A stretch of DNA of 44,482 bases from Octopus bimaculoides (GCF_001194135.2 NC_068998.1:10342731-10387212); one strand, 5' to 3'. Numbered from the stretch's first letter, positions 2,322-26,580 are shown. Made by a program: numbers and translations. Notes: a model not told the origin generated them from the letters alone.

Positions 2322-2491
2322 TTCAATATGTAGCGATGTATAATTACGTTTCTGATGAACCCTGTGATTTAACCTTTAACCAAGGAGATGTGATTACTGT
2401 TGTGGCAATGGAAGGTGACTGGTGGACTGGTACTATTGGCGATCGATCTGGAATATTTCCTGCTAACTATGTGAAGAAAATGGAAGTTCAG
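2322..2491 (+). CDS. ITSN: Intersectin SH3C exon ([57 protein letters not shown])
   Basis: Acceptor ttcttccag|, donor CAG|gtaagc. Complete SH3 motifs (AMY-Y, DLTF-GD, DWW-G, G-FP-NYV). Closely resembles vertebrate ITSN1 SH3C ([35 protein letters not shown]). Confidence 0.96.
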
Positions 2492-5763: not shown

Positions 5764-6921
5764 TTTCTAACATTGTAAAACACAGTGGGTTTTGTTCTGA
5801 AGATATAAGACAATGATATTGAGCGCAAGGTGTTTGGGAGCATAACAAGCAAAACTAAACAAAGTGTGCCTAGGGGTTCGAGGCGTTGGGTTTATGTTCT
5901 AAAGATTCTGGGTTCCAATCTTGAATCAGACAGCATATTGTCTCCTTTGTTTTGTGTTGCTTCGGTTTACTCAGCTGAATATGAGTACCAACTGAGTGCT
6001 TGTGTAGCTTTCTCTCTTTCAAATTGTTAGATCGTTAATGTTCTGCTCAATCAAAATTTGCAAGGTCTGTGAGGGTGCCTATGTCTGTTCATGAATACAT
6101 AGACACTGGAAACAATTAGTAAATGCCTTGTACATGATTCCCAGGTTTAACTCATTTCTGAGTGATAGCTATGATATATTTTTTTTATTTTTTTTTTTTT
6201 ATTTGACACATTTGGTGGAGGAAGAGAATATTAGCAAAATTTCAGAAATTTTCTTTTTTCATCTTGAATGTATATTTGAGACTTTGTCATTACCCATGCA
6301 AACGAAAAACAGAACTTAATTCACAATCTTTCACATCAAAATTTAAGTTGGAAGGTTGGTAATAAAAACATGAAGGACAGGAACAGAGGATTTCAAGTGT
6401 TGTCAAGACAAATAGTATTGTAACAAATCTAATGGCTAGATATGAATTAAAAGGATTTAATGAAACAAAATTCTAATTGTCTCCTTTCAATATATCAGCA
6501 TTTATTAGACAATAATAGTTTACTTAAATACATATTCAGATTTGTAAATAATTCACTAATTCATAGACGTTACGAATCTAAAACATCAATATTCTTTGGA
6601 AACCTTTAAATGACTTTTGTGACAGATTTGTAAAATGCTGAATGTTCCATTTCTCCATTGAATGTGTCATTTGAATAGCAGTAATTAATAAGAAGAGAGA
6701 GATTCCAACTACAGCATTGGAAGAAGGTGTCTATGTATGAACTTGGGAACTTTAGAGTGTTTTACAATATGCTGTATATGCGGGGTGCTGAACATTTAGT
6801 TACTATATTTGAGGATGGTGTGTTTTTTTAGTGATAAAATCATTATAAATGAAAGCGATTAAGGCTCAAATAAATATTCAATTCTTTCGTTGGTTTCAGT
6901 GTTTAAAAAATTTGTCATTCC

Positions 6922-7983: not shown

Positions 7984-8079
7984 NNNNNNNNNNNNNNNNN
8001 NNNNNNNNNNNNNNNNNNNNNNNNNNNNNNNNNNNNNNNNNNNNNNNNNNNNNNNNNNNNNNNNNNNNNNNNNNNNNNN

Positions 8080-8168
<89 letters not shown>

Positions 8169-8492
8169 TACATATATATATACACATACATACATATATA
8201 TACACACACATATATATATATATACACACGTACATACATATATGTGCATATATATAGATTTTAGTGTGTGTGTGTATATATATCCCATCTAACAATGAAT
8301 TCTGTCCCTCTACATAAAGCTTATTATTGTAGCTCGTTCCCTAACTAGTTAGTCGCACATTTTGACCTCTCTTCTCCCACATCTGTTGTCAGCCATGGCA
8401 ATTTCTTCCATTTTTTTTTTTTTTTTTTCATTTTTTTTTTTGTACTGGGCTGTTCTCCATTTACTAAGTTTGCTGTTTTTGTGATATAATAG

Positions 8493-8658
8493 GAAGATTT
8501 CGGAGGTGTCCTAGAGACTGTTGCGACCACAAGTATCATGCCTGAATTGGCTGTGGCCCCGGCTGGGGATAGTACAACCAATGAGAAAGCCACTGTGATT
8601 GATGACCAAAATGACCTCTCTGTGCAACAGTCACAAACTCCACCCGTTGTTGATGATG
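8493..8658 (+). CDS. ITSN: Putative alternative intersectin SH3C-SH3D linker exon (EDFGGVLETVATTSIMPELAVAPAGDSTTNEKATVIDDQNDLSVQQSQTPPVVDD), phase 0-1, GC donor
   Basis: GC-richer coding-like island in AT-rich intron. Acceptor gctgtttttgtgatataatag|. Only the phase-0 frame is open, matching the SH3C donor. Best donor is ATG|gcatgt (GC-AG type), whose terminal G joins AA at 20301 to give the conserved Glu. Confidence 0.55.
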
Positions 8659-9081
8659 GCATGTTGTCTGTGTGTACCTTAACTTACTCTCTCTGCAACT
8701 ACTAATAATCTTTCTCCTACTCTACCCCTTTTGCTTTCTCACTTGCTCTCCCCGTCTCCCTTATGGATGCTTTCCTCCTCTTACTAATTCATCTTAGACC
8801 TTTTGTCAATGTTACCCTTGCTGTTTACAGTTTTGCTTATTGATGACATCATCATCGTCGTCATAATCATCGTCATCATCATCATCATCAACATCAGTAG
8901 CTGAATGATTTACAGTACACCTTGTCTTTCATCTCTCTCTCTCTCTCTGGGAGTTGATTAGTCAAGAACTGGGGTTGATGGTTTAAGCTAAATCTCTCCC
9001 CTCAAAATTGCTGGCCTTTTTCTAAATCGGAATCCATTACTATTATTATTATTATTATTGCTATTGTTGTTATTGTTATTG

Positions 9082-9290
9082 AAGGCAAAAATCCTCTGGG
9101 ACTTTGACTTCCAGACAGGCAAAGTTTTAGAACACCAATGGCTGGATATAGTATCCTTTAAGAGTGCCTAATAACTGTTATGGTAGTGCCTGGAGATCAA
9201 CATATTGTCATGAAAGAAAGAGAAAAGGTTGACAAATATGGAGATCTGAAAATTGAGATTACCAAGATGTAGTCGATGTCATTGACAAGC
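9082..9290 (+). mobile_element. Decayed RLE-type (R4/Dong-like) non-LTR retrotransposon endonuclease fragment
   Basis: Translates, with one frameshift, as KAKILWDFDFQTGKVLEHQWLDIVSFK/CLITVMVVPGDQHIVMKEREKVDKYGDLKIEITKM*. This matches the ILWD..QTD..LEH.RPDI..D..VP.D....KE.EK..KY.DL..E pattern. Confidence 0.75.
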
Positions 9291-9837
9291 TCCATTCCTG
9301 CCACACTCCAGGCCTTGTACCTATTGTGGAAAGGATTGTTATCATTTATTTCTTGTAGTTTTACATTCTTAGTTTGAATCCCATCAAGGATAACTTTGCC
9401 CTTTATTCTTTCTGAGTCACTTAAAGTAGGTACCAGTTGAGCACTGGTGTCGAATAATCCATGAGATCTTATCCCCAAAGTTTCAGGTCTTATGCCTATA
9501 GTAGAAAGAATTATTATTGTTACTATTATTATTGTAAGCTAGAGTTTTTATAGAAATGTATCAGAAATAATGCATTTCTCATAGCTCACCTTCAACAGTT
9601 CTATGGCAGATGTTCTTGACCATTCAAGCTTTCAGTTCCTTGGTGGTGTCTGTCTTAATGCTACCTTTGGTATTCTGTCCTGGCCATCTGAGCCATTGGT
9701 ATTTAATTTCAAAGACCATACAATTGAACCAAGTGTGTAGCATCACCCCTCATTTAATAGTTTGTTGTGCTGGAAAATGCAGCAGATTTTTCTCGGGCAT
9801 TTATTGTGGGAACCCTTTTTCAAATGTTCTTGATCTA

Positions 9838-10030
9838 GTGGTTTGAGTATTGCACTCCTGGATGTAAGATTGTAGTTTCAGTTCCTAGACTGGACAATGG
9901 AGTGTGTTCTTGAGCAGAGCACTTCATCTCATGTCGTTCCAATTCACTCAGCTGTAATTGAGCTCCAGCAACAGTTGAGAAGTTAACCTTCCAATGGACT
10001 AGCATCTCTTTCAGGAGGTAGTGTTGTTAC
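9838..10030 (+). mobile_element. SINE family C, decayed
   Basis: ctagtggtttgagtattgcactc..gtaagattgtagtttcagttcctagac..gtgttcttgagcagagcacttc. Confidence 0.65.
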
Positions 10031-10248
10031 ATATACTGGGTTAAGCCCCAGTTTTCTCATCCCTAGGTCTTGTGATTGATATTAGTCTAAGTCACATATT
10101 TGACTTGATGTATCTGGGCCTGGATAAAAAAAACAACAAAACAAAAATTAGCGTACTAATTTAGTTCAATACTATGCCTGCTCCCCTTTAAAAAGGAAAA
10201 AAAAATTTCTTTTTTGCCTGTTTCTGCTTATTCTGCCTGAATATTAAC

Positions 10249-10482
10249 TTAACCCTTTAACATTCAGATTCCTCTTACTCTGTCGCATGTAATGTTTATT
10301 CATTCACATCGTTTTGAATTAATCATGCATTAACTTGTAGCCATGAGATTTCAATGATGTGATTATTTATTATTAGAATGATGTTGTAGGATAGGTATGA
10401 GAGGCTGGATCTAGTCGCTTCACATATGAATCAAGTTGAATATTTGGGCCGGATATGACCAGTTTAAATTTTAATGGGTTAA
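10249..10482. mobile_element. TTAA-bounded MITE family 1, copy 2
   Basis: ttaaccctttaacattc...tttaaattttaatgggttaa, 234 bp, TTAA-CCC / GGG-TTAA ends. Confidence 0.7.
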
Positions 10483-10994
10483 AAATGCAAATTTCTTTGG
10501 AATTTTCAGCCTCTCAGACTATTAGACTATGAGTATGTATTTCTTTTCATCAAACAAGTGGAACATTGCTGAAGCTATTGATAGATCCATCTTATATAAA
10601 TTTCAATATTTCTCTCAGACACTGCAATATGAAGAACCTGGTGTTAAAACTCCATATACATATGCTTCAGAATGAAACATTACTTGAGTACAGAGCAGTT
10701 ATAAGGAATTGGGATGACAATGGAATAAACAATTGCTATGAACTTCATTAACTTACATGTATATACTTGTATTACATGTATATACATAAATATAAATGTT
10801 TTCCTAAATAAATTGCATTTCATGTTTGAAGCTCTGATGAAACTATAGGGCGATATTCAAGCATCCAGCTATGAGTGCATTGCATCTTATAGTAGAAACA
10901 ACTGTAAGCTAATGGAGTTCATAACATATTTATTTATTCCTTTGTCATCCCATACATACATACATACATACATACAAACAAACAAACAATGGCT

Positions 10995-11322
10995 TCTGTG
11001 GGGGAACTGATCAAAGGCTAACGATCTGTTGGAGGACAGAGGAAAAGAAACAAAAATCAAGTTGCTACCACCCTGTGGAAATGCACAATTCCTCCTATAG
11101 ATCTGGTGACTCTTGCTGTGGATCAAAAGAAATGGCAAACCATCTGTCATCAAACTTGTGAAACTGTCAAGACAAGGCATCATCAATGGCTCAGTGAGCA
11201 TGAAATGAGCTGTGGATGCTGCTAGATCACCTCCAATGCCCAGCTCATCAGTTCCTTGTCCAACCTGTGGAAAACTCTGCAATTTCGTTTTTGGTCTTCA
11301 CACACATTAGTATGTTCACTAA
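10995..11322 (+). mobile_element. Decayed RTE-clade LINE 3' fragment with terminal C2H2-like finger
   Basis: LWGELIKG*RSVGGQRKRNKNQ..LAVDQKKWQ, then frameshifted VPCPTCGKLCNFVFGLHTH*YVH*. Matches the RTE C-terminal GEL..G.R..GGQ.KR motif and the CP.CG..C...GL.SH.R.H finger. Confidence 0.75.
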
Positions 11323-11571
11323 CTGTGTTTGGCACCAACTTGAAGGGATGTTGGTGTCCTCAGAGCTAAGCACCTCTAAGCTAGCCAAAATAGCTATATA
11401 TATATATATATATATATATATNNNNNNNNNNATATATATATATATATATATTGGTTTATTCTGTTTTTCCATGCTGACATGGGTTGAGCAAGCCTGGTCA
11501 CCACACTTTCACCACTTGTCATGGTGCTTTGTCATCTTTGTTTTATTTCTAGATGACAATATTATGCATGT

Positions 11572-11614
<43 letters not shown>

Positions 11615-12321
11615 CAGAATGGTGAAATGATGGTCATACTATACATAGACATAGTAAAGGATGTGATGGTTGCAATTCAATTTTGAATAGTGCCATCCCT
11701 TGATGGCTCTCTCTCAAAAGCAGCTTGGACGTGACTTTTCGGTCCTGCTGGGGATCCGTACCATTTTGCACTGTTAAAGATGTGGTAATGAAGAGCACCT
11801 CCTGCAACAGGCGTTCAGAAAACTTACCACTCTTGCTGATACATATTTTTATTCCATCATGGAATTTTACATTGAGTGTTTTACCTCCTTTGGTTATGGC
11901 CATGCATAATATGTAATACATAATAATAAGAGATACATACCTATATATATATATATATATACATGAAGTTGTTATATATGTTTTGAATAATGAATTTCAA
12001 AATCTCTGACTTGCCAAACATTTTGTTTGATGAAGTTTATTCATGATAAGCTGGTCATTCTCATTCTCCGCTCTTTCCCTTTCAGAACCAATTTCCTTTT
12101 TCTCCCCCCCCCCCCACCTCCATGTGCTGTACTTATCATTTTTATCTCTTTCTCTCTCTCTCTCTCTCTCTCTGCTCCCCTTATCTTATTCTTACCTTTT
12201 CAGCCTGTTTGTTATTTCTCCAGTCCATCCTGCTGTCTATCCTACCCACTTCTGCCTCCCTATATTTTATTTTATTTTATTGTTTCATTTATTAGATGTG
12301 GCTTTTGTTGTTGGATATTTT

Positions 12322-12799
12322 TTTTTGATTTATATATAAAAAAAAAATTGTTTTTTCTTTTTTTTTTGCATGATTTATTTTTATTTTTGCCTGTCTTTCA
12401 TTTGCTTTTGTTACCATTTTTGAATAGTTAAGTTTTTTTTTTTTTTACATCTTAAATTATTACTTTTTTTTTTTTTGCAACTGATGATTTTTTTAACCAA
12501 GATAAAAATATAATGGTTATGGCACTGGATGGCAGAATTGGTAATGTCATTGAATNNNNNNNNNNTTTTTGATTTATATATAAAAAAAAAATTGTTTTTT
12601 CTTTTTTTTTTGCATGATTTATTTTTATTTTTGCCTGTCTTTCATTTGCTTTTGTTACCATTTTTGAATAGTTAAGTTTTTTTTTTTTTTACATCTTAAA
12701 TTATTACTTTTTTTTTTTTTGCAACTGATGATTTTTTTAACCAAGATAAAAATATAATGGTTATGGCACTGGATGGCAGAATTGGTAATGTCATTGAAT
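12322..12799. other. 234-bp direct duplication across a 10-N gap (probable scaffolding artefact)
   Basis: 12322-12555 and 12566-12799 are essentially identical apart from homopolymer lengths and are separated only by 10 N. Confidence 0.85.
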
Positions 12800-14020
12800 A
12801 AACTTATGTTAATTTGGTTACATATCTTCATATTCTGAGTTCAAATTTCGCAAAGGTTTAACTTTACTCTTCATGCTTCCAGTATTGATAAAATAAAGCA
12901 ATAATATGCAAGTGTTGAGTTCTAATAACATTTGAGAACACCCTTCTATATTTTTAATTCAGATCCTTTTGTGATCGAATTTACCATTCATCCTTCCATC
13001 ATCCTCAAAATAAAGTAATAGTGTACAAGCACAGGGGTTCAATGGTTTTTTTAATATCTCATTTTATCTTCAGAGTTTCAACCCATGCCAGTAGCCCAAC
13101 CCATGCCAACATGCAGCATAGACATTAACTGATAAGTTCAAATTATTCTGTGATTGACTTTACTTTGTATCTCTTCGAGGTCAATATTGTAAGCACTAGA
13201 GACCGAAATAACACGAGTGATAAATATTAAAGTTTCATTATGCAGTATTGCAAAAATGCAAAAAAAAAAGAACAACAACAATTCATCGTAATCAAACAGT
13301 ATACAGTGTGACTGCACAAAATACATGGTGTCACCGATAAGTTTCAGTAACAGACCATGATGGTTGACGTGTTAAGTTCTGAGTTTAAATTCCACTGAGG
13401 TTAAGTTTGTCTTTCATTTTTCTGGTGTTGATGAAATAAAGAATTAGTTAGGTACTGAGGTTAATATAACTGACTGCTCCCTCTCCTGCACAATTTCTAG
13501 TTTCATACCTTACCTACACAAGCTGTTGTTGCCAAGGGCTGTGGAGAGGCAGAGGTGTGGGTGGAGGGACACAATCAGTTGAATAGCAAGCAAAATACTC
13601 TAACATTTAGTTTCATCCCTGCTATATTCTGAGTTCAAATTCAGCTAAAGCTGACCTCTTTATGTTTCTGGGTGACAGGTATCAGTGAAATAAATGCTAA
13701 TCAAGAACTGGGATGGGAATATTTGATGTTAATGTTCTTTATTCTTCATGGAGAAATTTATGGCTCTGTTAGGAATCAGAAATCCTTCTCATTTTTGATT
13801 TTGTTGACTTTATTAATGTTTTTTTTTTATTGTTATTATCGTATATTATTTATTATTTAGCTTCTCTTCAGGAATGATATAGTTTACAAAGCTGGGGCAG
13901 AGATGACTTTTGAAAAACCTGCTGTAAAGGTTTCAGAAAAAATGAAAATACAATAATAATGAGATGATGATGATGATGATGATGATTATTATTATTGTTA
14001 TTATTATTATTATTATTATT

Positions 14021-14250
14021 GTGGCTGAATTGTTAGTGCACCAGACACAAACACTTAGCAGTATTCATCTGTCTTTATGTTCAAATTCCGCTGTGGTTGA
14101 CTTTACCTTTCGTCCTTTCAGGGTTGATGAAATAAGTACCAGCTGAGTACTGGGGTGCATATAATCATCTAGCCTTCTTCCTCCCCGTCCCCACCCCCAC
14201 AGAAAAGGTAAAGTTTCCAACCTTGTGACTATAAGTAGAAAGGATTATTA
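14021..14250 (+). mobile_element. tRNA-type SINE family A
   Basis: gctgaattgttag..ttcaaattcc..gactttacctttc.tccttt..aagtaccag..ctgggg..tagaaaggattatt. Further decayed copies lie near 13340-13700, 14401-14475, 9395-9530, 8960-9050 and 28680-28760. Confidence 0.7.
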
Positions 14251-16088
14251 TTATTATCATTATTGTGTGTTCTAACACAACATCCTACTTTAAGTGGTGT
14301 ATATTTCACCTTTGGGTGTTAATACTACCTCTGTTACTCTACAATTATAATTGTTATTATTTTATAATAATTATATAATTATCATTATTATAATTATTAA
14401 GGTGGCGAGCTGGAAGAATTGTTAGCTCACTGGACAAAAAGCTTCGTGGCATTTCTTTCGGCTTTTCATTCTCAGGCCATTTCTGATTGTCAATTATCAA
14501 AGTGGTTCCCCTGTTTTGTAAACTATACTATTCCAGAATAAGGGTGTTTATTTATTTCTTTATTTACTAATCAAACTTAGCTGGAAAGAGATTCTGAGCT
14601 TTTTTGCATGGCACTTTACTGACAATTAGAATCTACGTTAGTTCAATAAGCTCTCTCTATAAATTCTGTAGCAACTGATGGTTTGTATGTAAAAACAAAT
14701 ATCGCCTAATAATATTAATAATAATAATAATATTAACAGAACATAAAATTAAGATTTGGGTTTGATTTTTTTGAATATATACATTGCTTGTTTTATACTG
14801 CTTGTATATGTGTGTGCATACACTGGGCGTACCATGCATTTGGGAAAAAAAACAAAATGCAATGATAAACTTGACACCGAACAGTAAATGAAAAACAAAA
14901 GAAACACAAGATAGTGCTCAAAAATTTGTAAACATATTCAACTGGATACATCAAAGAGACAGGCCATTCAACAATACTGCCTTCATCCCTCAGGAATCCA
15001 TACAAGTGTCAGCAATGCCACATGCCATATCCATAAGGTAGTTCCCGATGAGTATTTGGCATTATAGGGCTTGTGCGTCTATGCACAAGCTGTAGATCAA
15101 GTGAACTAAGATTCCCTATAATGTTGAGTATCACATTATCACACAGTTCTCTCGGGTCTTTTGGGGCGGGGGGGCACAAACTGCCCTTGTATCATGTAAG
15201 ACTTGTATCTGACATCCTCGTGTGACACATGTCCATCTGTTTAGTTGACTCTGCCACCTTTGATCTGCTGCTTGCTGATGTCCTGAATTTCTTAGATGAA
15301 CTTGGTCATTGTGATGACACCAAACTACTGAAAAAGTTTTTGTTTTTCTTTATCAAGGATGGCATGTCCCTGCCAGAGGCTTCCACCTATTTCCAATTCC
15401 TGATCACAAATGACCCAGTCACATTCAGGAAGCTAGTGATCTCCAAGTTACTGTGGTTGGTGACCAAAGGCATAATACTTGACTTCCTTTGCATTTCCTC
15501 TGTCAAACTGCAATCTGTCATGTTGGTGCTGTTGATACATTTACATCTGAAGGAGTAACATTAAGCAATGTTGTCTAATATTTTTAGATCTCCTTCCATT
15601 TATAGTTTGTTTGCGAATATACACAAAAGCAGCAGTAACAACAACTACTACAAACATTAAGCCCTTTTTCCCTGCTAAAGGAGAGGTTAGCCAGTGGTCC
15701 ATACCACAGTCTTCTTATTGTATTCATTATGGTTCTCTTTTTGTGGCTATGTGATTTATGGCTGGATGTTCTTCTTGTCATTAACCCCTTTAGTCACCTC
15801 TTATAACATCATGCAGGGATACAGTGTGCCTATTCTAAATCTAGGATGCAAAGTGCCTATTCTTATCTAGGATACACTATCTGAAAAATCAACAGGATGG
15901 CCATAATTGAAATGCTTTTAGTCATATCATCAGCTCTTTCTCTTTTTGAGGCAATAATTTACACTTGGATGCCTTTGCTGTCTCTAACCCTTTTTGTCAC
16001 CTTTCGCAATAATATGCAAGGATACAGTGCAACAACTGTAAACCTGAGTACACATGAACACATACACATGCATGTGTTGTTTATATTC

Positions 16089-16168
<80 letters not shown>

Positions 16169-16249
16169 ATTGAAAAATTGGTTTGTATGTTCCATTCTCT
16201 TTTGGTTACTCAAAATATTTAATATTTGTACAAAACTCATACTGGTAAT

Positions 16250-16301
16250 CTTGTATTGCTTTCTTGTATTGCTTTCTTGTATTGCTTTCTTGTATTGCTT
16301 T
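16250..16301. repeat. 13-bp minisatellite cttgtattgcttt x4
   Basis: Four exact tandem copies. Confidence 0.95.
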
Positions 16302-17299
16302 TCTTTGTCTCTTTTGCTCTTCGTTAACAATACTCATCTGAAGTAGTTCATTACTCAATGAAACAACCACGTCAATCATTCATTCATTGTTTGCTTCAAG
16401 TTTTTCTTTTTGTTTTAATTTTGTTGTTACGTTTTTTTTTCTAGAAAGTTGGTAATTGCTGGTAGTTTAGCTGATTTAATTTGAAATACTTAGTGGAGTT
16501 TTATATTAAATAAATTGCTTAATTGCCAATATATTTTGGGGGTAATGAATTTTGTCATTTTGACTTTCAAAAAAAATTTTAAAAATAATAAATAAATAAA
16601 TAAATAATTAGTAAAAATTCTAATGAAAGTGTTTTAAATGACATTGTTTTGAATTTTGAAATTAAAATACGAAATTTAGGTAAATAAAAAAAATTTAAGA
16701 ATTGAAATATAATGTACAGAAATAAATATATCTTTACACACACGCACACACACACACATCTTCTCCGTGACTTACAACCATCCACTCTTACAACCACATA
16801 AAATAAACGTAGTTTTTACAAACATATTCAAGATGCTGTGCATTGTTATCGTAAGATACATGAGGAAAAAAAGACAAAAAAACTATTCCAACAAACCTTA
16901 CCATGTTCCTGAAAGAACCATCTATTTCAATCCAAGAACATGACTGTGAAGATTAAAAATCTATTTTCAGTTGCTCTTTTTTTCACAGGAACATTTTTTT
17001 TTATTGTATGTATGTGGAATTTCATTTGTATTAATTTTTACGTTAATTTTAGCTTGTATTTTTGTATATAGTACAGTAGAGTACATATTGTGTATTTTTC
17101 ACATTATGTACAATAATTATGGATTAAATTTTTGTGGTTTATACTTTTATAACCCGTTTGAATGAAAATAGTGTTGAAAAATATAAATCCGACATACGAC
17201 CAGAACAACTCACGACCTGTCAGTTGGAATTGACCTTGGTCATGAGTCGAGGACAAGGTGTATACATAATATATATATACACATATATATAATCTCTGA

Positions 17300-17585
17300 C
17301 ACTCATACACTCATAACTAGTTCGTCAATTATGATGAGGGTTCCAGTGAAATTAACATGCGAGTGGCTGAGCACTCCACAAACAAACACAGATCTTAGGG
17401 AGATTCAGTGTGACACAGAATGTGACGAGGCTGGCCCTTTTGAATTACTGGTACAACTCAGGTACAGCTGAGTGGACCGGAGCAATGTGAAACAGTGTCT
17501 TGGTCAAGGACACACTGCACCACTATGAATTGAACTCGTGACATTATGATTGTGACCCAAATATCCTAACCACTAAGCCATGTGC
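17300..17585 (-). mobile_element. SINE family C, reverse orientation
   Basis: cagctgagtggac.ggagcaatgtgaaa..gtgtcttg.tcaaggacac..cctaaccactaagcca is the reverse complement of the family C head. Confidence 0.7.
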
Positions 17586-17764
17586 CTTCAGACATATACA
17601 CAATGCATAGTTTTCATCAAGCATCATGTAGAAATATTGAAACTACAATTCTTTATCATATGCCAATCAACATTTGTCATTATCAATCTGCCAACACACT
17701 CACATGTATAAAGTTTGTATACTTTTCATTATGCATGACATTTATAAACACGGAAACTATATAA

Positions 17765-17817
17765 ATCTCTCTCTTTCTCTCTCTCTCTTTCTCTCTCTCT
17801 CTTTCTCTCTCTCTCTT

Positions 17818-17898
<81 letters not shown>
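17765..17898. repeat. (CT)n microsatellite
   Basis: Direct reading. Confidence 0.95.
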
Positions 17899-17901
<3 letters not shown>

Positions 17902-18000
17902 GTAAGAAGTTTGCTTCCTAACCACATGGTTCCAGCTTCACTCCCACTTGTGAGTGGATTTGGTAGCAGGAAACTGAAAGAAGCCCATCAAATATTTGTG
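17897..18000 (+). mobile_element. SINE family B head after a (CT)n tract
   Basis: ctgtggtaagaagtttgcttcctaaccacatggttcc..ggaaactgaaagaagccc. Confidence 0.7.
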
Positions 18001-18007
18001 TGAATGC

Positions 18008-18250
18008 AAGTGGCCTAATGTTTCAGCTGTTGCAGTCATGATCGCAACGTCATGGTTTTGATTCCCAGATTGGGTGATACACTGTGCTCTTGAGCAAAAC
18101 ACTTCATTTCACATTACTCTGCTGTTACTTCAGCATCTGATTTGATGGAGAGAATGAGCTAACACACAGCACAAACATTCGATTGCTATAAACAAATCAT
18201 CTGCACAGGTTGTTTCAGCAAGAAGTTACAGAACACTCATCCGTTGTCTC
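18008..18250 (+). mobile_element. SINE family C-related copy with a different 3' part
   Basis: Head and tgtgctcttgagcaaaacacttcatttc block shared with family C. Confidence 0.55.
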
Positions 18251-18462
18251 TGTTAGATTACACAAAATAAATACACATACACACGCATATATCACATAGG
18301 CATATATACATATGTGTGTATATATATATATATAAAATCAGTTACATAAGAAAATGCGTAACATAAATGAAGGAAACTGAAGCATTAGTTTGCTAGTCTA
18401 ACTAGAAAGTACTGATTAACTAACAGAATGATAACAACTTAATGATGATGATAATAATAATA

Positions 18463-18493
<31 letters not shown>

Positions 18494-18733
18494 TAATAAT
18501 AATTATCTGACTCCAACTGGAAACTGTATATAATTAACAAAAACTAAATGTATAAATATAATTAAATTCTATCAGTTGGTATTTGCATTTGTTTTGTATT
18601 ATTTTTTGGCTTTTCTTTATGGATTTTTTAAATTAAATTATTGTTACTTTTTATAAGAACGCTTTCTTATATAAACTGAATCCTTTGACTAACATATATA
18701 ATTTTTTTTTTTTAAATTTTGTTTTCTTTTTAG

Positions 18734-18761
18734 ACCGGACAGAAACCGAGTAAGAAGCCAG
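18734..18761 (+). CDS. ITSN: 28-nt intersectin microexon (TGQKPSKKP + G of Glu)
   Basis: Acceptor ttttgttttctttttag|, donor CAG|gtgggt. Phase 0-1 links SH3C to SH3D and restores the KKPEIA motif that precedes ITSN SH3D. Confidence 0.88.
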
Positions 18762-19205: not shown

Positions 19206-20300
19206 TATTTCACTGATGCTGACTGGAATCACCAATGATCATAAATATTTATTCAAAGAGTCAAAGAATGGGAGAGGAACAATCTAAAGGGACTTTCAGG
19301 GTTATGCTGGAAAGCGCAGCTAAACTGTATAATATTATTCTAGGAGGAAGTGTATTTGGGTAAACAGTGAAATGTTTTAACACTGGATAATAAATTAAAG
19401 TCATGTAAGAAGATAAAAGGAGGTCAAATCATAAAGTAGGTTGAAATTAGTGAAAGCAACTGTACCGTAAAGAAGATATTGGGAAGTATGAAAACAGACT
19501 AAAAAATAACACACCTCAAAAGATTGCTGGTTTTCTTGGTGTTTTTTTTTCCACAGAGTTTCTTTACCTGTACATATTACACATACACACACGTGTATAT
19601 CCAATTACATGATTGGCTTTCACTTAGTTTTCGTCTACCAGTCAGATGCATTCACAAGGCATTTCCCCCACTTAATGGTCCTCGCCTCTTCTAATGATTA
19701 AATGCTGTGGCTGGTGCATTACTGAGCCAGAATCAGCAATTCTAACCTCCAATTCAGCTTCTTGCTTTTCGTCACTTATGAAACTAAGAAAAAATCTTTT
19801 TAAAGCAATAAAAACATTTGACTGCTGTTTCCAACAAGTCAAGCAACCATGTAGAGGTTAAAAAAACCATATGATTCAACATTTTATGCAAAAATGTGAA
19901 TTTGAAGAATTATTCAACCTCTTTTATAATATATTTTGTAATATAGAACTAAAGTATTAAAATGTATGCATATTAATGTGTGTATATTCATAAATAATTA
20001 TATACCCACATATATAATTATGCAGGCATATTCATAAACACATCTATTTATACACATTTCTCTTTTTCTTGATACACACACACACACGTATATATGTACA
20101 CAAATGCACATCTGTTTGTCTATCTACACACATGCACACACATTTGTCTATACACACACATTTGTCTATACATATACACAGTTATATACCTATATGTGTG
20201 TGTGTGTTCCTTGTAATCATCAAAGCTATATTTTTTCTTGCTAATTTTTTTTTCCACCCTTCACCTGAATAATTATCAGTTTACTTGTCTTCAATTTCAG

Positions 20301-20422
20301 AAATTGCTTCCGTAATTGCCAGTTATACTGCGACTGGCCCTGAGCAACTGTCCCTGCAGCCAGGCCAGTTGATACAGGTGCGCAAGAAGAGTCAAAGTGG
20401 CTGGTGGGAAGGTGAATTGCAG
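20301..20422 (+). CDS. ITSN: Intersectin SH3D, first half ([41 protein letters not shown])
   Basis: Acceptor tcaatttcag|, donor CAG|gtaaga. Near-identical to ITSN1 SH3D ([41 protein letters not shown]). Confidence 0.97.
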
Positions 20423-20834
20423 GTAAGACAATAGTTATATTTGAAGCATTAGCAGATTGAGAGTCGGTGAATGGCCTAGTGTAAAGTGGTTGGCATTGGG
20501 AAGGACATCCAGCCATAGAAACTATGCCAAAGAAGGCAGTGAAGCTTGGCGCACACCTTGGCTTGCCAGCTCCTATCAAACTGTTCAGCCCAGGGCTTTG
20601 TGGAGAATGGTCATGAAATGGTGCTGATAACACTATGTAATTGAGATACTGGAAGAGATGTGTTGTAGTCTTCTTGTTTAATCCATGTTAGTTTAGAAGA
20701 AGAGAAAATAAATGAATTTAAAATACATGCTAAACATAGTGATGCTGCTGTTACTGTTAATTAGCCCCAAATTAACTCTGGTCCAGCAGACCTCTAACCA
20801 AAGGCTCACTCTCCCAGTGCTGTTTCCTTTCATT

Positions 20835-21120: not shown

Positions 21121-21426
21121 TACTCCACATAGACTCAAAGGATTTATCAACATTCACCTGTGTGTGTCCTTCCTTTTTTTGTAAGATGGTGAGATGTGAT
21201 TTGAGGAGGTTGGGCTGCTACTTTTAACAGGTCAAGCAACAGTGTAGACACTTCTTCAGTGTGTGGCTGAAAGGGTACAGGGGCAATAATAATGACCACC
21301 AGTGAAAGATATTCAGGAAGAAAGTATGGAAATAAGAAGGTAGACTTAATGTATGTATTTACCGACATTTTCATTGCTAAATGCTTTTAATAAATTTCTT
21401 TCTGCTTTTTTGTTCTCTTTTTACAG

Positions 21427-21555
21427 GCCCGCGGTCAAAAAAGAAAGATGGGTTGGTTTCCTGCAAATTATGTGAAACTGCTTGGCTCCTCTAGTGCACG
21501 ATCAACTCCTGATCACCATCAAGGGATGTCTCCTAGCCCTCAGCTGCAGACCATG
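21427..21555 (+). CDS. ITSN: Intersectin SH3D second half plus linker ([43 protein letters not shown])
   Basis: Acceptor ttctcttttttacag|, donor ATG|gtatgc. Matches [23 protein letters not shown]. 129 nt, phase 0-0. Confidence 0.95.
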
Positions 21556-22994: not shown

Positions 22995-23109
22995 GTGTGT
23001 GTTTGTGTGCATGAGAGTATATAATAAAATTTAAATAATCTTCATATATTCTATGTCCATTTTTGAATTTCTTCTGTGCTACAATTTGTTTGTTTTAGTA
23101 ACAGTTCAT

Positions 23110-23551
23110 TCATATCATCGTCATAGTTTAACGTCTGCTTTCCATGCTAGCATGGGTTGGACGATTTGACTGAGGACTGGTGAACCAGATGGCTGCACCA
23201 GGCTCCAATCTGATCTGGCAGAGTTTCTACAGCTGGATGCCCTTCCTAACGCCAACCACTCCGAGAGTGTAGTGGGTGCTTTTACGTGCCACCGGCATGA
23301 GGGCCAGTCAGGCGGTACTGGCAATGGCCACGCTCAAATGGTGATTTTTACGTGCCACCTGCACAGGAGCCACTCCAGTGGCACTGGCAATGACCTCGTT
23401 CGAATGTTTTTTTGTGCCACCAGCACAAGTGCCAGTAAGGCAATGCTGGTAACGATTACGCTCAAATGGGGCTTTTCATGTGTCACTGGCACGGGAGCCA
23501 GACGGCTGCTCTAGCAATGATCAAGCTCGGATGGTGCGGTTAGTTTGTTAT
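23110..23551 (-). mobile_element. Interspersed repeat with (GAT)n tail (SINE/LINE 3' end), with internal tandem ttttacgtgccacc units
   Basis: gtttaacgtctgctttccatgctagcatgggttggacg..; reverse complement of 26169-26310. Confidence 0.8.
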
Positions 23552-24046
23552 NNNNNNNNNNNNNNNNNNNNNNNNNNNNNNNNNNNNNNNNNNNNNNNNN
23601 NNNNNNNNNNNNNNNNNNNNNNNNNNNNNNNNNNNNNNNNNNNNNNNNNNNNNNNNNNNNNNNNNNNNNNNNNNNNNNNNNNNNNNNNNNNNNNNNNNNN
23701 NNNNNNNNNNNNNNNNNNNNNNNNNNNNNNNNNNNNNNNNNNNNNNNNNNNNNNNNNNNNNNNNNNNNNNNNNNNNNNNNNNNNNNNNNNNNNNNNNNNN
23801 NNNNNNNNNNNNNNNNNNNNNNNNNNNNNNNNNNNNNNNNNNNNNNNNNNNNNNNNNNNNNNNNNNNNNNNNNNNNNNNNNNNNNNNNNNNNNNNNNNNN
23901 NNNNNNNNNNNNNNNNNNNNNNNNNNNNNNNNNNNNNNNNNNNNNNNNNNNNNNNNNNNNNNNNNNNNNNNNNNNNNNNNNNNNNNNNNNNNNNNNNNNN
24001 NNNNNNNNNNNNNNNNNNNNNNNNNNNNNNNNNNNNNNNNNNNNNN

Positions 24047-25443: not shown

Positions 25444-26168
25444 NNNNNNNNNNNNNNNNNNNNNNNNNNNNNNNNNNNNNNNNNNNNNNNNNNNNNNNNN
25501 NNNNNNNNNNNNNNNNNNNNNNNNNNNNNNNNNNNNNNNNNNNNNNNNNNNNNNNNNNNNNNNNNNNNNNNNNNNNNNNNNNNNNNNNNNNNNNNNNNNN
25601 NNNNNNNNNNNNNNNNNNNNNNNNNNNNNNNNNNNNNNNNNNNNNNNNNNNNNNNNNNNNNNNNNNNNNNNNNNNNNNNNNNNNNNNNNNNNNNNNNNNN
25701 NNNNNNNNNNNNNNNNNNNNNNNNNNNNNNNNNNNNNNNNNNNNNNNNNNNNNNNNNNNNNNNNNNNNNNNNNNNNNNNNNNNNNNNNNNNNNNNNNNNN
25801 NNNNNNNNNNNNNNNNNNNNNNNNNNNNNNNNNNNNNNNNNNNNNNNNNNNNNNNNNNNNNNNNNNNNNNNNNNNNNNNNNNNNNNNNNNNNNNNNNNNN
25901 NNNNNNNNNNNNNNNNNNNNNNNNNNNNNNNNNNNNNNNNNNNNNNNNNNNNNNNNNNNNNNNNNNNNNNNNNNNNNNNNNNNNNNNNNNNNNNNNNNNN
26001 NNNNNNNNNNNNNNNNNNNNNNNNNNNNNNNNNNNNNNNNNNNNNNNNNNNNNNNNNNNNNNNNNNNNNNNNNNNNNNNNNNNNNNNNNNNNNNNNNNNN
26101 NNNNNNNNNNNNNNNNNNNNNNNNNNNNNNNNNNNNNNNNNNNNNNNNNNNNNNNNNNNNNNNNNNNN

Positions 26169-26315
26169 GGAAGGGCATCCAGCTGTAGAAAGTCTGCCAA
26201 ATTAGATTGGAGCCTGGTGTTGCCATCCGGTTTCACCAGTCCTCAGTCAAATCGTCCAACCCATGCTAGCATGGAAAGCGGACATTAAACGATGATGATG
26301 ATGATGATGATGATA
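26169..26315 (+). mobile_element. Same (GAT)n-tailed repeat, 3' end
   Basis: ggaagggcatccagctgtagaa..cccatgctagcatggaaagcggacattaaacgatgatgatg. Confidence 0.8.
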
Positions 26316-26406
26316 TATACTGTATGATGTAAATTAACGAATAAACTGTGGAATGTCTTATGTCAATTCTTTCATTTCTCTTTCTCTCTCCGTGCTTCTT
26401 TTTCAG

Positions 26407-26580
26407 TTGAACAAGTTACTTGTATGTACCCTTATACAGCTCAGAATTCCGATGAGCTGACATTCCAGAAAGATGATGTGATCAATGTTATCAACAAAGA
26501 TGACCCCGATTGGTGGAAAGGCGACCTAAATGGAATGATTGGTGTATTTCCATCCAACTACGTCGCTGTCGCTAACTCTT
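26407..26580 (+). CDS. ITSN: Intersectin SH3E exon ([58 protein letters not shown])
   Basis: Acceptor cttcttttttcag|, donor CTT|gtaagt. Matches ITSN1 SH3E (MYDYTAQNDDELAF..INVLNKEDPDWWKGEVNG.VGLFPSNYV). 174 nt, phase 1-1. Confidence 0.96.

What the first reader, a model, noticed from the sequence alone, without database searches (positions are those of the whole stretch)
8493..18761. Probable mutually exclusive SH3C-SH3D linker exons enforced by frame (166-nt GC-donor exon versus 28-nt microexon)
Both 8493-8658 and 18734-18761 are phase 0-1 and end in G, which completes GAA (Glu) with the SH3D exon at 20301. Either one alone keeps the frame, giving a 55-aa acidic Thr/Val/Pro-rich spacer or a 9-aa basic TGQKPSKKP linker. 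Including both reads GAC CGG ACA GAA ACC GAG TAA, a stop at 18751-18753. This would switch both the length and the charge of the SH3C-SH3D linker. I do not recognise the long exon from vertebrate ITSN, so it may be lineage-specific (inference).
Basis: partly seen in the sequence, partly recalled or inferred. Interest (0 to 1): 0.7.

Follow-up and report, generated by a model that had tools for sequence, protein, structure and literature searches.

The report
Variable linker exon in intersectin gene
Between two protein-binding (SH3) domains of an intersectin gene lies a probably genuine extra exon for a floppy acidic spacer, but relatives suggest it is simply added in front of a conserved 28-base microexon rather than swapped for it, so it is an ordinary kind of splice variation.

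Summary
The arithmetic of the finding is correct. Exons 8493-8658 (166 nt, GC donor) and 18734-18761 (28 nt) each keep the SH3C-SH3D frame alone, and together they give TAA at 18751-53. The assembly gaps are harmless intronic artefacts.

The long exon looks real. Its frame-specific coding signal beats 99.9% of intronic windows and beats the confirmed SH3 exons. Five other invertebrate intersectin loci carry an acidic or Ser/Thr/Pro-rich coding-like ORF in the same intron.

Mutual exclusivity is not supported.
- It rests on one weak GC donor (ATG|gcatgt).
- A GT donor 11 nt downstream (8670) gives a 177-nt phase 0-0 exon that reads in frame into the microexon.
- Four of the five relatives' exons have only phase-0 donors where coding ends; the fifth also has a phase-1 GT.
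- The microexon (28-34 nt, "..KKP") is conserved or fused to SH3D in relatives.
- 36 of 39 intersectin proteins keep a basic K/R-K/R-x motif before SH3D.
- Two isoform pairs show a cassette insert upstream of a retained motif.

Best reading: a weakly spliced cassette linker exon used together with a constitutive microexon (about 0.5). The swap is about 0.13. No transcript data were reachable, and RNA-seq or RT-PCR would settle it.

The parts
2322..2491 (+). SH3C exon of the intersectin gene (phase 1 in, phase 0 out; donor CAG|gtaagc)
   Evidence: 84% identical to the SH3C exon ORF of another cephalopod-like genome (L004)
8411..8441 (+). T-run (polypyrimidine) upstream of the long exon's acceptor
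   Evidence: (TRF)
8462..8468 (+). TACTAAG branch-point-like heptamer, 25 nt upstream of the acceptor AG (8491-8492)
   Evidence: read directly from the sequence, function inferred
8493..8669 (+). Long linker exon, preferred boundaries (177 nt, phase 0-0, 59 aa EDFGG...VVDDGMLS, net charge -10); weak GT donor TCT|gtgtgt at 8670-8671
   Evidence: coding signal; frame check; donor scores; phase 0-0 counterparts in L009, L012, L014, L015, L016
8493..8658 (+).
   Evidence: cumulative coding signal peaks at 8657
18734..18761 (+). 28-nt microexon TGQKPSKKP+G (phase 0-1), strong sites (py tract 0.8, CAG|gtgggt 7.4 bits); conserved, probably constitutive
   Evidence: counterparts of 28-34 nt in L012, L015, L016 and fused to SH3D in L009, L010, L014
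18751..18753 (+). TAA reached only if the 166-nt version is joined to the microexon
20301..20422 (+). First SH3D exon (phase 1 in: G|AA ATT = E-I; donor CAG|gtaaga); the phase-1 intron before it is ancient
   Evidence: the same intron position is seen in vertebrate and many invertebrate genomic ORFs
21427..21555 (+). Second SH3D exon (phase 0-0, ATG|gtatgc)
11422..11431 (.). Assembly gap inside an (AT)n microsatellite, intronic
12322..12799 (.). Assembly gap 12556-12565 flanked by two 100% identical 234-nt copies (unmerged overlap), intronic
7984..8079 (.). 96-N assembly gap inside an (AT)n/(AC)n microsatellite, 400 nt upstream of the long exon; not named in the finding

Best explanation
The window holds the SH3C-SH3E part of an intersectin (ITSN) gene of a cephalopod-like mollusc. 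The intron after the SH3C exon contains a genuine, fast-evolving exon that encodes an acidic, Thr/Val/Ala/Pro-rich and presumably disordered spacer.

This exon is the local version of a variable linker exon found at the same intron position in other invertebrate intersectin genes. It most likely works as a phase 0-0 cassette:
- acceptor at 8493;
- weak GT donor at 8670, giving 177 nt and 59 aa;
- spliced onward to the conserved, constitutive 28-nt microexon 18734-18761 (TGQKPSKKP), then to SH3D.

Inclusion lengthens the SH3C-SH3D tether from 9 to 68 residues and adds about 10 negative charges. It keeps the conserved basic K-K-P motif directly in front of SH3D. Skipping gives the short linker.

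Shown: the frames, the coding signal, the positional counterparts and their phases, and the conservation of the motif.
Inferred: which donor is used, that the exon is alternative rather than constitutive, and any functional effect.
For: 1. Coding signal in exactly the proposed frame.
- Frame excess is 30.5 bits, the top 0.09% of intronic windows and above the confirmed exons.
- Periodicity chi-square is 33, beaten only by microsatellites.
- First-position G is 0.48 and second-position G is 0.09, like the SH3C and SH3E exons.
- The peptide has no Cys, Trp, Tyr, His or Arg, whereas other chance candidates are hydrophobic or Cys-rich junk.

2. The acceptor is good: a T-run, TACTAAG 25 nt upstream, and a TAG acceptor.

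3. The body is unique in the window, is not a tandem repeat, and has no Pfam hit.

4. Same-position exons in five other loci, each with a phase-0 GT donor at or near the end of coding-like sequence:
- L009: 99 nt.
- L012: 279 nt, CAG|gtgcct.
- L014: ends GAT|gtaaga at 15203.
- L015: 897 nt, GGT|gtaaga exactly at the coding-signal peak.
- L016: 192 or 135 nt, with composition almost identical to the octopus exon.

5. The microexon is conserved. It is 28 nt in L012 and 34 nt in L015 and L016, always phase 0-1. It is fused to SH3D in L009, L010 and L014.

6. 36 of 39 intersectin proteins have [KR][KR]x immediately before SH3D, whatever the linker length (13-141 aa).

7. Two isoform pairs insert a cassette upstream of the retained motif: crayfish P0002/P0133 and P0123/P0128.

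8. The open reading frames P0131 and P0042 carry a long Thr/Ala/Pro linker together with KKPE.

9. A+L177+M+D is open.
Against: - The GT donor at 8670 is poor: TCT|gtgtgt, flank score -1.9 bits, against 7-8 for the gene's strong donors. The GC site at 8659 has better flanks, 2.95 bits.
- The cumulative coding signal peaks at 8657, just before the GC, although the next four codons are neutral.
- The counterpart exons in the other loci are my own predictions without transcript support. They show no significant sequence similarity to the octopus exon, so homology is positional and compositional only.
- The taxa of those loci are unknown.
- No transcript from this or a close species could be retrieved.
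Confidence: 0.5

Rival explanations
1. The long exon uses the GC donor at 8659 (166 nt, phase 0-1) and is spliced directly to SH3D, skipping the microexon. Either exon alone is productive, and co-inclusion gives a premature TAA and decay. The linker would switch between a 9-aa basic form and a 55-aa acidic form that lacks KKP.
For: - The frame arithmetic is exact.
- The GC site has the best flank score of any donor at the exon's 3' end (2.95 bits). That is similar to the confirmed ATG|gtatgc donor of the second SH3D exon at 2.2 bits.
- The coding signal peaks at 8657.
- The final G restores the conserved Glu.
Against: - GC donors are about 1% of donors and normally have near-perfect flanks (established knowledge). 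This one mismatches at -2 and +4.
- Four of the five positional counterparts in other genomes are clearly phase 0-0 and cannot bypass the KKP exon in frame. L016 is ambiguous.
- The swap would delete a motif present in 36 of 39 intersectins.
- Both observed isoform pairs retain the motif.
- The microexon has strong splice sites, and no mechanism for skipping it selectively is visible. Only microsatellite complementarity was found.
- The two exons are not homologous and differ six-fold in length, unlike classical mutually exclusive pairs.
Confidence: 0.13
2. 8493-8658 is not an exon. It would be a chance GC-rich open frame in a 17.8-kb intron, and only the microexon links SH3C to SH3D.
For: - ORF plus splice-like sites of this quality are expected by chance. 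There are 5 on the reverse strand of the same intron.
- Both candidate donors are weak.
- There is no homologue in 1.84 billion representative proteins.
- A GC-rich interspersed repeat in the window reaches a similar raw coding score.
- The minus strand is also open over 105 codons.
Against: - The frame-specific signal is in the top 0.09% and higher than in the real exons. The minus-strand frames score about 18-25 bits worse.
- The peptide composition is typical of disordered linkers.
- Coding-like ORFs of the same character lie at the same intron position in five other genomes.
Confidence: 0.15
3. The exon is real but is used in another way. The options are:
(a) a frame-shifting 'poison' exon (166 nt plus microexon) that sends transcripts to decay;
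(b) an alternative last exon whose frame runs on to TAA 8703-8705 and truncates the protein after SH3C;
(c) the 166-nt exon is followed by an undetected 3n+2 exon before the microexon.
For: (a) The stop at 18751-53 exists.
(b) The frame stays open for 15 more codons, and truncated ITSN1 isoforms are known in vertebrates (PMC3645719).
(c) One candidate exists, 13523-13554 (32 nt, donor 4.9 bits).
Against: (a) A strong frame-specific coding signal over the whole exon would be unnecessary for a poison exon.
(b) There is no AATAAA or ATTAAA within 1.5 kb downstream. The extra 15 codons look like junk (Cys/Tyr/Leu), and the coding signal falls there.
(c) The single candidate has no coding-like character. 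No further coding signal lies in 8700-18700 apart from microsatellites. The two gaps there do not hide sequence.
Confidence: 0.12

Closest known systems
Alternative cassette inserts in the SH3C-SH3D linker of other invertebrate intersectins (crayfish Cherax quadricarinatus OTU49_003355: P0002 versus P0133; unnamed JGI organism: P0123 versus P0128)
   Same: Same protein and same linker. An extra Ser/Thr/Ala-rich segment of 22-23 aa is present or absent, upstream of a retained basic K-K-x motif. This is what the preferred model predicts for the octopus exon.
   Different: The inserts are shorter and unrelated in sequence. These are predicted proteins, not verified transcripts, and their exon structure was not examined.
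Known alternative splicing of vertebrate ITSN1 (neuron-specific 15-nt microexon 20 in SH3A; skipping of exons 25-26 removing SH3C; truncated isoforms), review PMC3645719
   Same: Same gene family. Microexons and splice variation in the SH3 region tune partner binding.
   Different: No variant of the SH3C-SH3D linker is listed there. The vertebrate linker ([21 protein letters not shown]) is short, and the KKP part is not a separate microexon. The octopus microexon is 28 nt (not 3n), so it cannot be a simple on/off microexon.
Mutually exclusive exons enforced by reading frame and nonsense-mediated decay (e.g. FGFR2 IIIb/IIIc; own knowledge: Jones et al. 2001 J Biol Chem; Smith 2005 Cell; Pohl et al. 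2013 Biosystems)
   Same: With the GC donor, both exons are 3n+1. Double inclusion and double skipping then both shift the frame.
   Different: Classical pairs are tandem duplicates of similar length and sequence, and the arrangement is conserved. Here the exons are 166 and 28 nt, unrelated, and relatives have a 3n exon instead.
GC-AG introns (U2-type, about 1% of metazoan introns; own knowledge: Thanaraj and Clark 2001 Nucleic Acids Res)
   Same: GC at +1/+2 with G at -1, A at +3, G at +5 and T at +6. GC donors are enriched among alternative donors.
   Different: Typical GC donors have near-consensus AG|GCAAGT. This one has T at -2 and T at +4.
Appendage-binding inter-SH3 linker of vertebrate ITSN1 (AP-2 binds the SH3A-SH3B linker; own knowledge: Pechstein et al. 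2010 PNAS)
   Same: A disordered linker between SH3 domains that carries function. The counterpart exons in L014 and L015 carry 4-5 DPF/NPF motifs.
   Different: The octopus exon has no DPF, NPF, FxDxF or WxxF motif. It lies in a different linker.

Membership tests
Intersectin (ITSN) gene, SH3C-SH3E region | Successive SH3 domains whose sequences match intersectin SH3C, SH3D and SH3E in order | tested here: met
   - tblastn with a remembered human ITSN1 segment places SH3C at 2324-2476, SH3D at 20300-20428 and 21421-21510, and SH3E at 26394-26576.
- Database hits are named intersectin by their sources (P0003, P0004, P0116, P0120).
- The hits carry Pfam SH3_1/SH3_2/SH3_9.
Intersectin (ITSN) gene, SH3C-SH3E region | Conserved phase-1 intron immediately before the E-I-A start of SH3D | tested here: met
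   The window has G|AA ATT at 20301. The same boundary is seen in dozens of genomic ORFs from vertebrates (..SCFP|EIAQ) and invertebrates (..MFV|EIAS).
Intersectin (ITSN) gene, SH3C-SH3E region | EH domains, coiled coil, SH3A/B, and DH-PH-C2 in the long isoform | not tested
   These lie outside the window, or were not found downstream of 26580 with the remembered query.
Mutually exclusive exon pair enforced by frame/NMD | Each exon alone keeps the frame; both together, or neither, break it | tested here: met
   This holds only with the GC donor at 8659. With the GT donor at 8670 the pair is in frame together.
Mutually exclusive exon pair enforced by frame/NMD | Both exons have credible splice sites at the required boundaries | tested here: inconclusive
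   The microexon sites are strong. The long exon's acceptor is good, and its GC donor has a 2.95-bit flank with mismatches at -2 and +4.
Mutually exclusive exon pair enforced by frame/NMD | Mature transcripts contain one or the other, never both | not testable with these tools
   No transcript of this or a close species was retrievable.
Mutually exclusive exon pair enforced by frame/NMD | Arrangement conserved in relatives (same phase class for both exons) | tested here: not met
   - Counterpart exons are phase 0-0 in L009, L012, L014 and L015. L016 has phase-0 and phase-1 donors of similar weak score.
- The KKP segment is fused to SH3D in L009, L010 and L014, where a swap is impossible.
Mutually exclusive exon pair enforced by frame/NMD | Exons are homologous and of similar length (classical tandem-duplicate type) | tested here: not met
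   The exons are 166 and 28 nt, and the peptides are unrelated.
GC-AG intron | GC at intron positions +1/+2 and AG at the 3' end | tested here: met
   GC at 8659-8660. AG acceptors lie at 18732-33 and 20299-300.
GC-AG intron | Near-consensus flanks (AG|GCAAGT) that compensate for the C | tested here: inconclusive
   ATG|gcatgt matches at -1, +3, +5 and +6 and mismatches at -2 and +4. This was scored with an approximate PWM from general knowledge, not a cephalopod model.
Phase 0-0 cassette exon encoding a variable SH3C-SH3D linker insert | Lies in the phase-0 intron directly after the SH3C exon, upstream of the KKP segment | tested here: met
   Window. Same position in L009, L012, L014, L015 and L016.
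Phase 0-0 cassette exon encoding a variable SH3C-SH3D linker insert | Frame-specific coding signal and a disordered-linker composition | tested here: met
   -.
- D+E is 0.20, S+T is 0.20 and K+R is 0.02, almost identical to L016 (0.20, 0.22, 0.03).
Phase 0-0 cassette exon encoding a variable SH3C-SH3D linker insert | Length a multiple of three with a usable donor at a codon boundary | tested here: inconclusive
   - The only codon-boundary donor at the 3' end is GT 8670 (TCT|gtgtgt, -1.9 bits).
- The counterparts also have weak donors, from -1.2 to 2.75 bits.
Phase 0-0 cassette exon encoding a variable SH3C-SH3D linker insert | Sequence homology to the counterpart exons | tested here: not met
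   BLASTP E = 0.38 against L009 and no alignment against P0042. tblastn of the peptide finds nothing in the loci searched (L001, L004, L009-L012). The relationship is positional and compositional only.

The most novel reading that the evidence does not exclude
Both donors are used. The GT donor would give a long linker that keeps KKP. The GC donor would give a frame-locked swap that produces an intersectin isoform without the deeply conserved basic motif in front of SH3D. That would be a pair of non-homologous, unequal exons made mutually exclusive purely by reading frame, evolved in cephalopods from an ordinary cassette by an 11-nt shift of the donor.
Probability: 0.1. Interest if true: 0.5.

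Novelty: new member of a known kind. Interest (0 to 1): 0.3.

Why it matters
Intersectin scaffolds endocytosis at synapses, and its SH3 domains bind dynamin, synaptojanin, N-WASP and Sos.

If the exon is used, it lengthens and acidifies the tether between SH3C and SH3D. That could change how the two domains engage multivalent partners.

The broader point is modest. The intron after SH3C seems to host a fast-evolving, weakly spliced linker exon in several invertebrate lineages. In two of them the exon carries DPF/NPF endocytic motifs. A 28-34-nt KKP microexon is conserved beside it.

For the scan, the useful lesson is about method. A frame-arithmetic argument built on a GC donor should be checked against a nearby canonical donor and against the phase of the exon in relatives.

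Tried and rejected
1. Word-indexed search of 5.8 billion proteins with the 55-aa peptide plus flanks gave no hit.
- I judge this uninformative. Proteins sharing more than 10 words with the flanks were not even collected.
- The window's own species is absent from the collection. The best SH3C exon ORF is 83% identical, and the SH3D exon is 87% identical at DNA level with no intron alignment.

2. Full HMMER search of the peptide against 1.84 billion representatives gave 0 hits. The exon sequence is therefore lineage-specific, or too short and divergent to detect.

3. I tried to recover cephalopod transcripts with a 106-aa query and then a 5-row alignment. Only proteins up to about 2.4 times the query length are returned. 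No transcript from a close relative appeared.

4. The Logan contigs of the nearest cephalopod-like species (L001-L008) are only 1.2-1.9 kb long and do not reach the linker exon.

5. L013 and L010 did not contain the relevant intron part.

6. The alternative-last-exon idea failed: there is no poly(A) signal within 1.5 kb.

7. The bridging 3n+2 exon idea gave only one unconvincing candidate.

8. A search for an RNA looping or docking structure that could skip the microexon found only microsatellite complementarity.

9. Repeat or transposon origin of the exon was checked. It is unique in the window, not tandem, and has no Pfam hit.

10. A U12-type 5' splice site at GTACCTTAA (8674) was rejected by eye. 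It lacks the T of the RTATCCTT consensus.

11. Accession look-ups in papers to name the source taxa gave nothing.

Full report
**1. Observation**

I read the four places named in the finding and recomputed lengths, phases and translations.
- The SH3C exon is 2322-2491 and ends CAG|gtaagc in phase 0.
- The long candidate, 8493-8658, is 166 nt. Its acceptor AG (8491-92) is part of an in-frame TAG, so the open frame begins exactly at the acceptor. The next two bases are GC (8659-60).
- The microexon, 18734-18761, is 28 nt with a strong pyrimidine tract and donor CAG|gtgggt.
- The first SH3D exon starts AA ATT at 20301.
- SH3C+long+SH3D and SH3C+micro+SH3D are open. SH3C+long+micro+SH3D stops at TAA 18751-53. 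SH3C+SH3D is out of frame.

**2. Gaps, tested first**

- Gap 12556-65 is flanked by two 100% identical 234-nt copies (12322-12555 and 12566-12799). This is an unmerged contig overlap, so nothing is missing.
- Gap 11422-31 lies inside an (AT)n microsatellite.
- A third gap of 96 N (7984-8079), not listed in the finding, lies in an (AT)n/(AC)n microsatellite 400 nt upstream of the long exon.
- All three are intronic. None interrupts an exon or affects a frame.

**3. Is the long exon more than chance?**

Taken alone, an AG, an open frame of at least 90 nt and a GT or GC with flanks as good as this one are not unusual.
- With thresholds set at the candidate's own values, the reverse strand of the same intron gives 5 such candidates. 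The whole minus strand gives 11.
- The other plus-strand candidates translate to hydrophobic or Cys-rich junk, or to an interspersed repeat.

What sets 8493-8658 apart is its coding signal.
- Its three-base periodicity (chi-square 33) is exceeded only by trinucleotide microsatellites.
- I trained a codon-position composition model only on the four confirmed SH3 exons. The proposed frame beats the other two frames by 30.5 bits. That is the top 0.09% of 10,546 intronic windows on both strands and higher than the SH3C and SH3E exons (24.3 and 23.8). The minus-strand frames score about 18-25 bits lower.
- The signal peaks at 8657, stays flat to 8669, then declines.
- The peptide has no Cys, Trp, Tyr, His or Arg and a net charge near -10.
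- The acceptor has a 31-nt T-run and a TACTAAG 25 nt upstream.
- The body is unique in the window, is not a tandem repeat and has no Pfam hit.

I put the probability that this is a real coding exon at about 0.85.

**4. The donor is the weak point**

- The GC site ATG|gcatgt has moderate flanks (2.95 bits on an approximate metazoan matrix). It mismatches at -2 and +4, which is unusual for GC donors, since they normally have near-consensus flanks (established knowledge).
- Eleven bases downstream lies the only codon-boundary donor at the 3' end, TCT|gtgtgt at 8670 (-1.9 bits). It is canonical but poor.
- With that donor the exon is 177 nt, phase 0-0, and adds GMLS. SH3C+177+micro+SH3D is open. 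The 177-nt exon joined directly to SH3D is not.
- The sequence therefore allows two readings: a swap (GC donor) or a plain cassette used with the microexon (GT donor).
- A rough likelihood comparison weighs the rarity of GC donors against the weakness of this GT. It favours the GT about three to one, which is not decisive.

**5. Relatives**

No transcript of this or a close species could be reached.
- The peptide has no relative among 1.84 billion representative proteins.
- The word-indexed searches were uninformative for reasons given under 'tried and rejected'.

The searches did return exon-level ORFs that served as handles to genomic loci of other invertebrates of unknown taxa. By SH3 similarity (66-84%) and shared motifs these are the nearest available relatives. 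In five of them the intron after SH3C holds a coding-like ORF of the same character.

| Locus | Counterpart exon | Donor |
|---|---|---|
| L009 | 936-1034, 99 nt, EGIPTDTTETANEGTDSFQEDFQPSGLRSPPPT | ACA\|gtatgg |
| L012 | 6229-6507, 279 nt, Pro/Thr/Ala/Glu-rich; signal in the top 1% of its locus | CAG\|gtgcct |
| L014 | ORF 13827-15311, ending at 15203; five DPF motifs | GAT\|gtaaga |
| L015 | 11364-12260, 897 nt; DPF/NPF motifs | GGT\|gtaaga, exactly at the peak of the coding signal |
| L016 | 11291-11482 or 11291-11425; composition almost identical to the octopus exon (D+E 0.20, S+T 0.22, K+R 0.03) | AAA\|gtaatg or GAC\|gtggga |

- In every one of these loci a phase-0 GT lies at or near the point where coding-like sequence ends. 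In four of them no phase-1 donor of positive score lies there. L016 also has a phase-1 GT of similar weak score.
- All these donors are weak (-1.2 to 2.75 bits), as expected for an alternatively used exon.

Downstream, the KKP segment is either a separate microexon of the same phase class as in the octopus, or is fused to the SH3D exon.
- Separate microexon: L012, 28 nt, PGSKLAKKP; L015 and L016, 34 nt.
- Fused to SH3D: L009, L010 and L014.

In those genomes the linker exon must therefore be read together with KKP. Bypassing KKP would shift the frame or is physically impossible.

**6. Protein-level evidence points the same way**

- Of 39 intersectin proteins in which both the end of SH3C and the start of SH3D are visible, 36 have [KR][KR]x directly before SH3D. 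This holds whether the linker is 13 or 141 residues.
- Two isoform pairs differ by a 22-23-aa insert upstream of the retained motif: crayfish P0002/P0133 and P0123/P0128.
- P0131 and P0042 show a long Thr/Ala/Pro-rich linker running into ..AKKPE in one reading frame. P0118 shows the short form.
- The phase-1 intron before E-I-A is ancient.
- The microexon has no UGC motif near its acceptor and has strong sites, so I take it to be constitutive (inference).

**7. Mechanism proposed**

The exon is the local, sequence-divergent version of a variable linker exon of invertebrate intersectins. It is most likely a weakly defined phase 0-0 cassette (8493-8669) that is included or skipped.

The 28-nt microexon is always used and supplies the conserved basic motif before SH3D. 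Inclusion changes the tether from 9 to 68 residues and adds about ten negative charges.

- Shown: the frames, the coding signal, the positional counterparts and their phases, and the conservation of the motif.
- Inferred: donor choice, alternative use, and function.

**8. Rivals**

- Swap through the GC donor: 0.13.
- Not an exon: 0.15.
- Other uses (poison exon, alternative last exon, hidden 3n+2 exon): 0.12 together. The second lacks a poly(A) signal. The third has one weak candidate and no coding signal.

**9. Comparison with what is known**

- Vertebrate ITSN1 has a neuronal microexon in SH3A, skipping of exons 25-26 that removes SH3C, and truncated isoforms (PMC3645719). No SH3C-SH3D linker variant is listed there.
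- Frame/NMD-enforced mutual exclusivity is a known mechanism (own knowledge). Its usual hallmarks, homologous exons and a conserved arrangement, were tested here and not met.

The finding is best filed as a new member of a known kind: an alternative cassette exon in a disordered inter-domain linker.

**10. Verdict**

Mutual exclusivity is not supported. Interest is modest (0.3). RNA-seq junctions or one RT-PCR would settle it.

Noticed in passing
window 21427-21555 and 26407-26580: The second SH3D exon ends in phase 0 (ATG|gtatgc), but the SH3E exon starts in phase 1 (ag|TT GAA). At least one 3n+1 exon must lie between them, possibly hidden in the gaps 22931-40, 23552-24046 or 25444-26168.
   Followed up: no
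L014 13827-15203; L015 11364-12260: Giant Ser/Thr/Pro/Asp-rich exons of about 300 to 450 codons lie at the same intron position as the octopus linker exon. They carry 4-5 DPF/NPF motifs of the AP-2 appendage / EH-domain binding type. This would put endocytic adaptor motifs between SH3C and SH3D.
   Followed up: partly
L010 10237-11400: The intron after the first SH3D exon holds a tandem array of more than ten degenerate copies of the exon's last codons (GWWEGELQ).
   Followed up: no
window 12322-12799: The 10-N gap is flanked by a perfect 234-nt duplication. The scaffold is about 244 nt too long here, an assembly artefact.
   Followed up: yes
window 23100-23550, 20457-20627, 26169-26290: Copies of one GC-rich interspersed repeat (core ..ccatgctagcatgg..) lie here. 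Its open frames reach raw coding scores like real exons and could mislead ORF-based exon calls.
   Followed up: partly
window 9036-9080 and 18440-18507: (ATT)n 380 nt downstream of the long exon is complementary to (AAT)n 230 nt upstream of the microexon. Pairing would bring those two exons together. Both are low-complexity repeats, so this is probably meaningless.
   Followed up: no
window 8345-8662, minus strand: A 105-codon ORF lies antisense to the long exon. Its frames score about 18-25 bits below the plus frame and it has no Pfam hit, so it is a by-product of the GC-rich coding stretch.
   Followed up: yes
window 8493-8505: GAG|gtgtcc at 8506 (0.5 bits) would make a 13-nt, 3n+1 mini-exon (EDFG+G) that is also in frame with SH3D. 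It is another arithmetic possibility without support.
   Followed up: no
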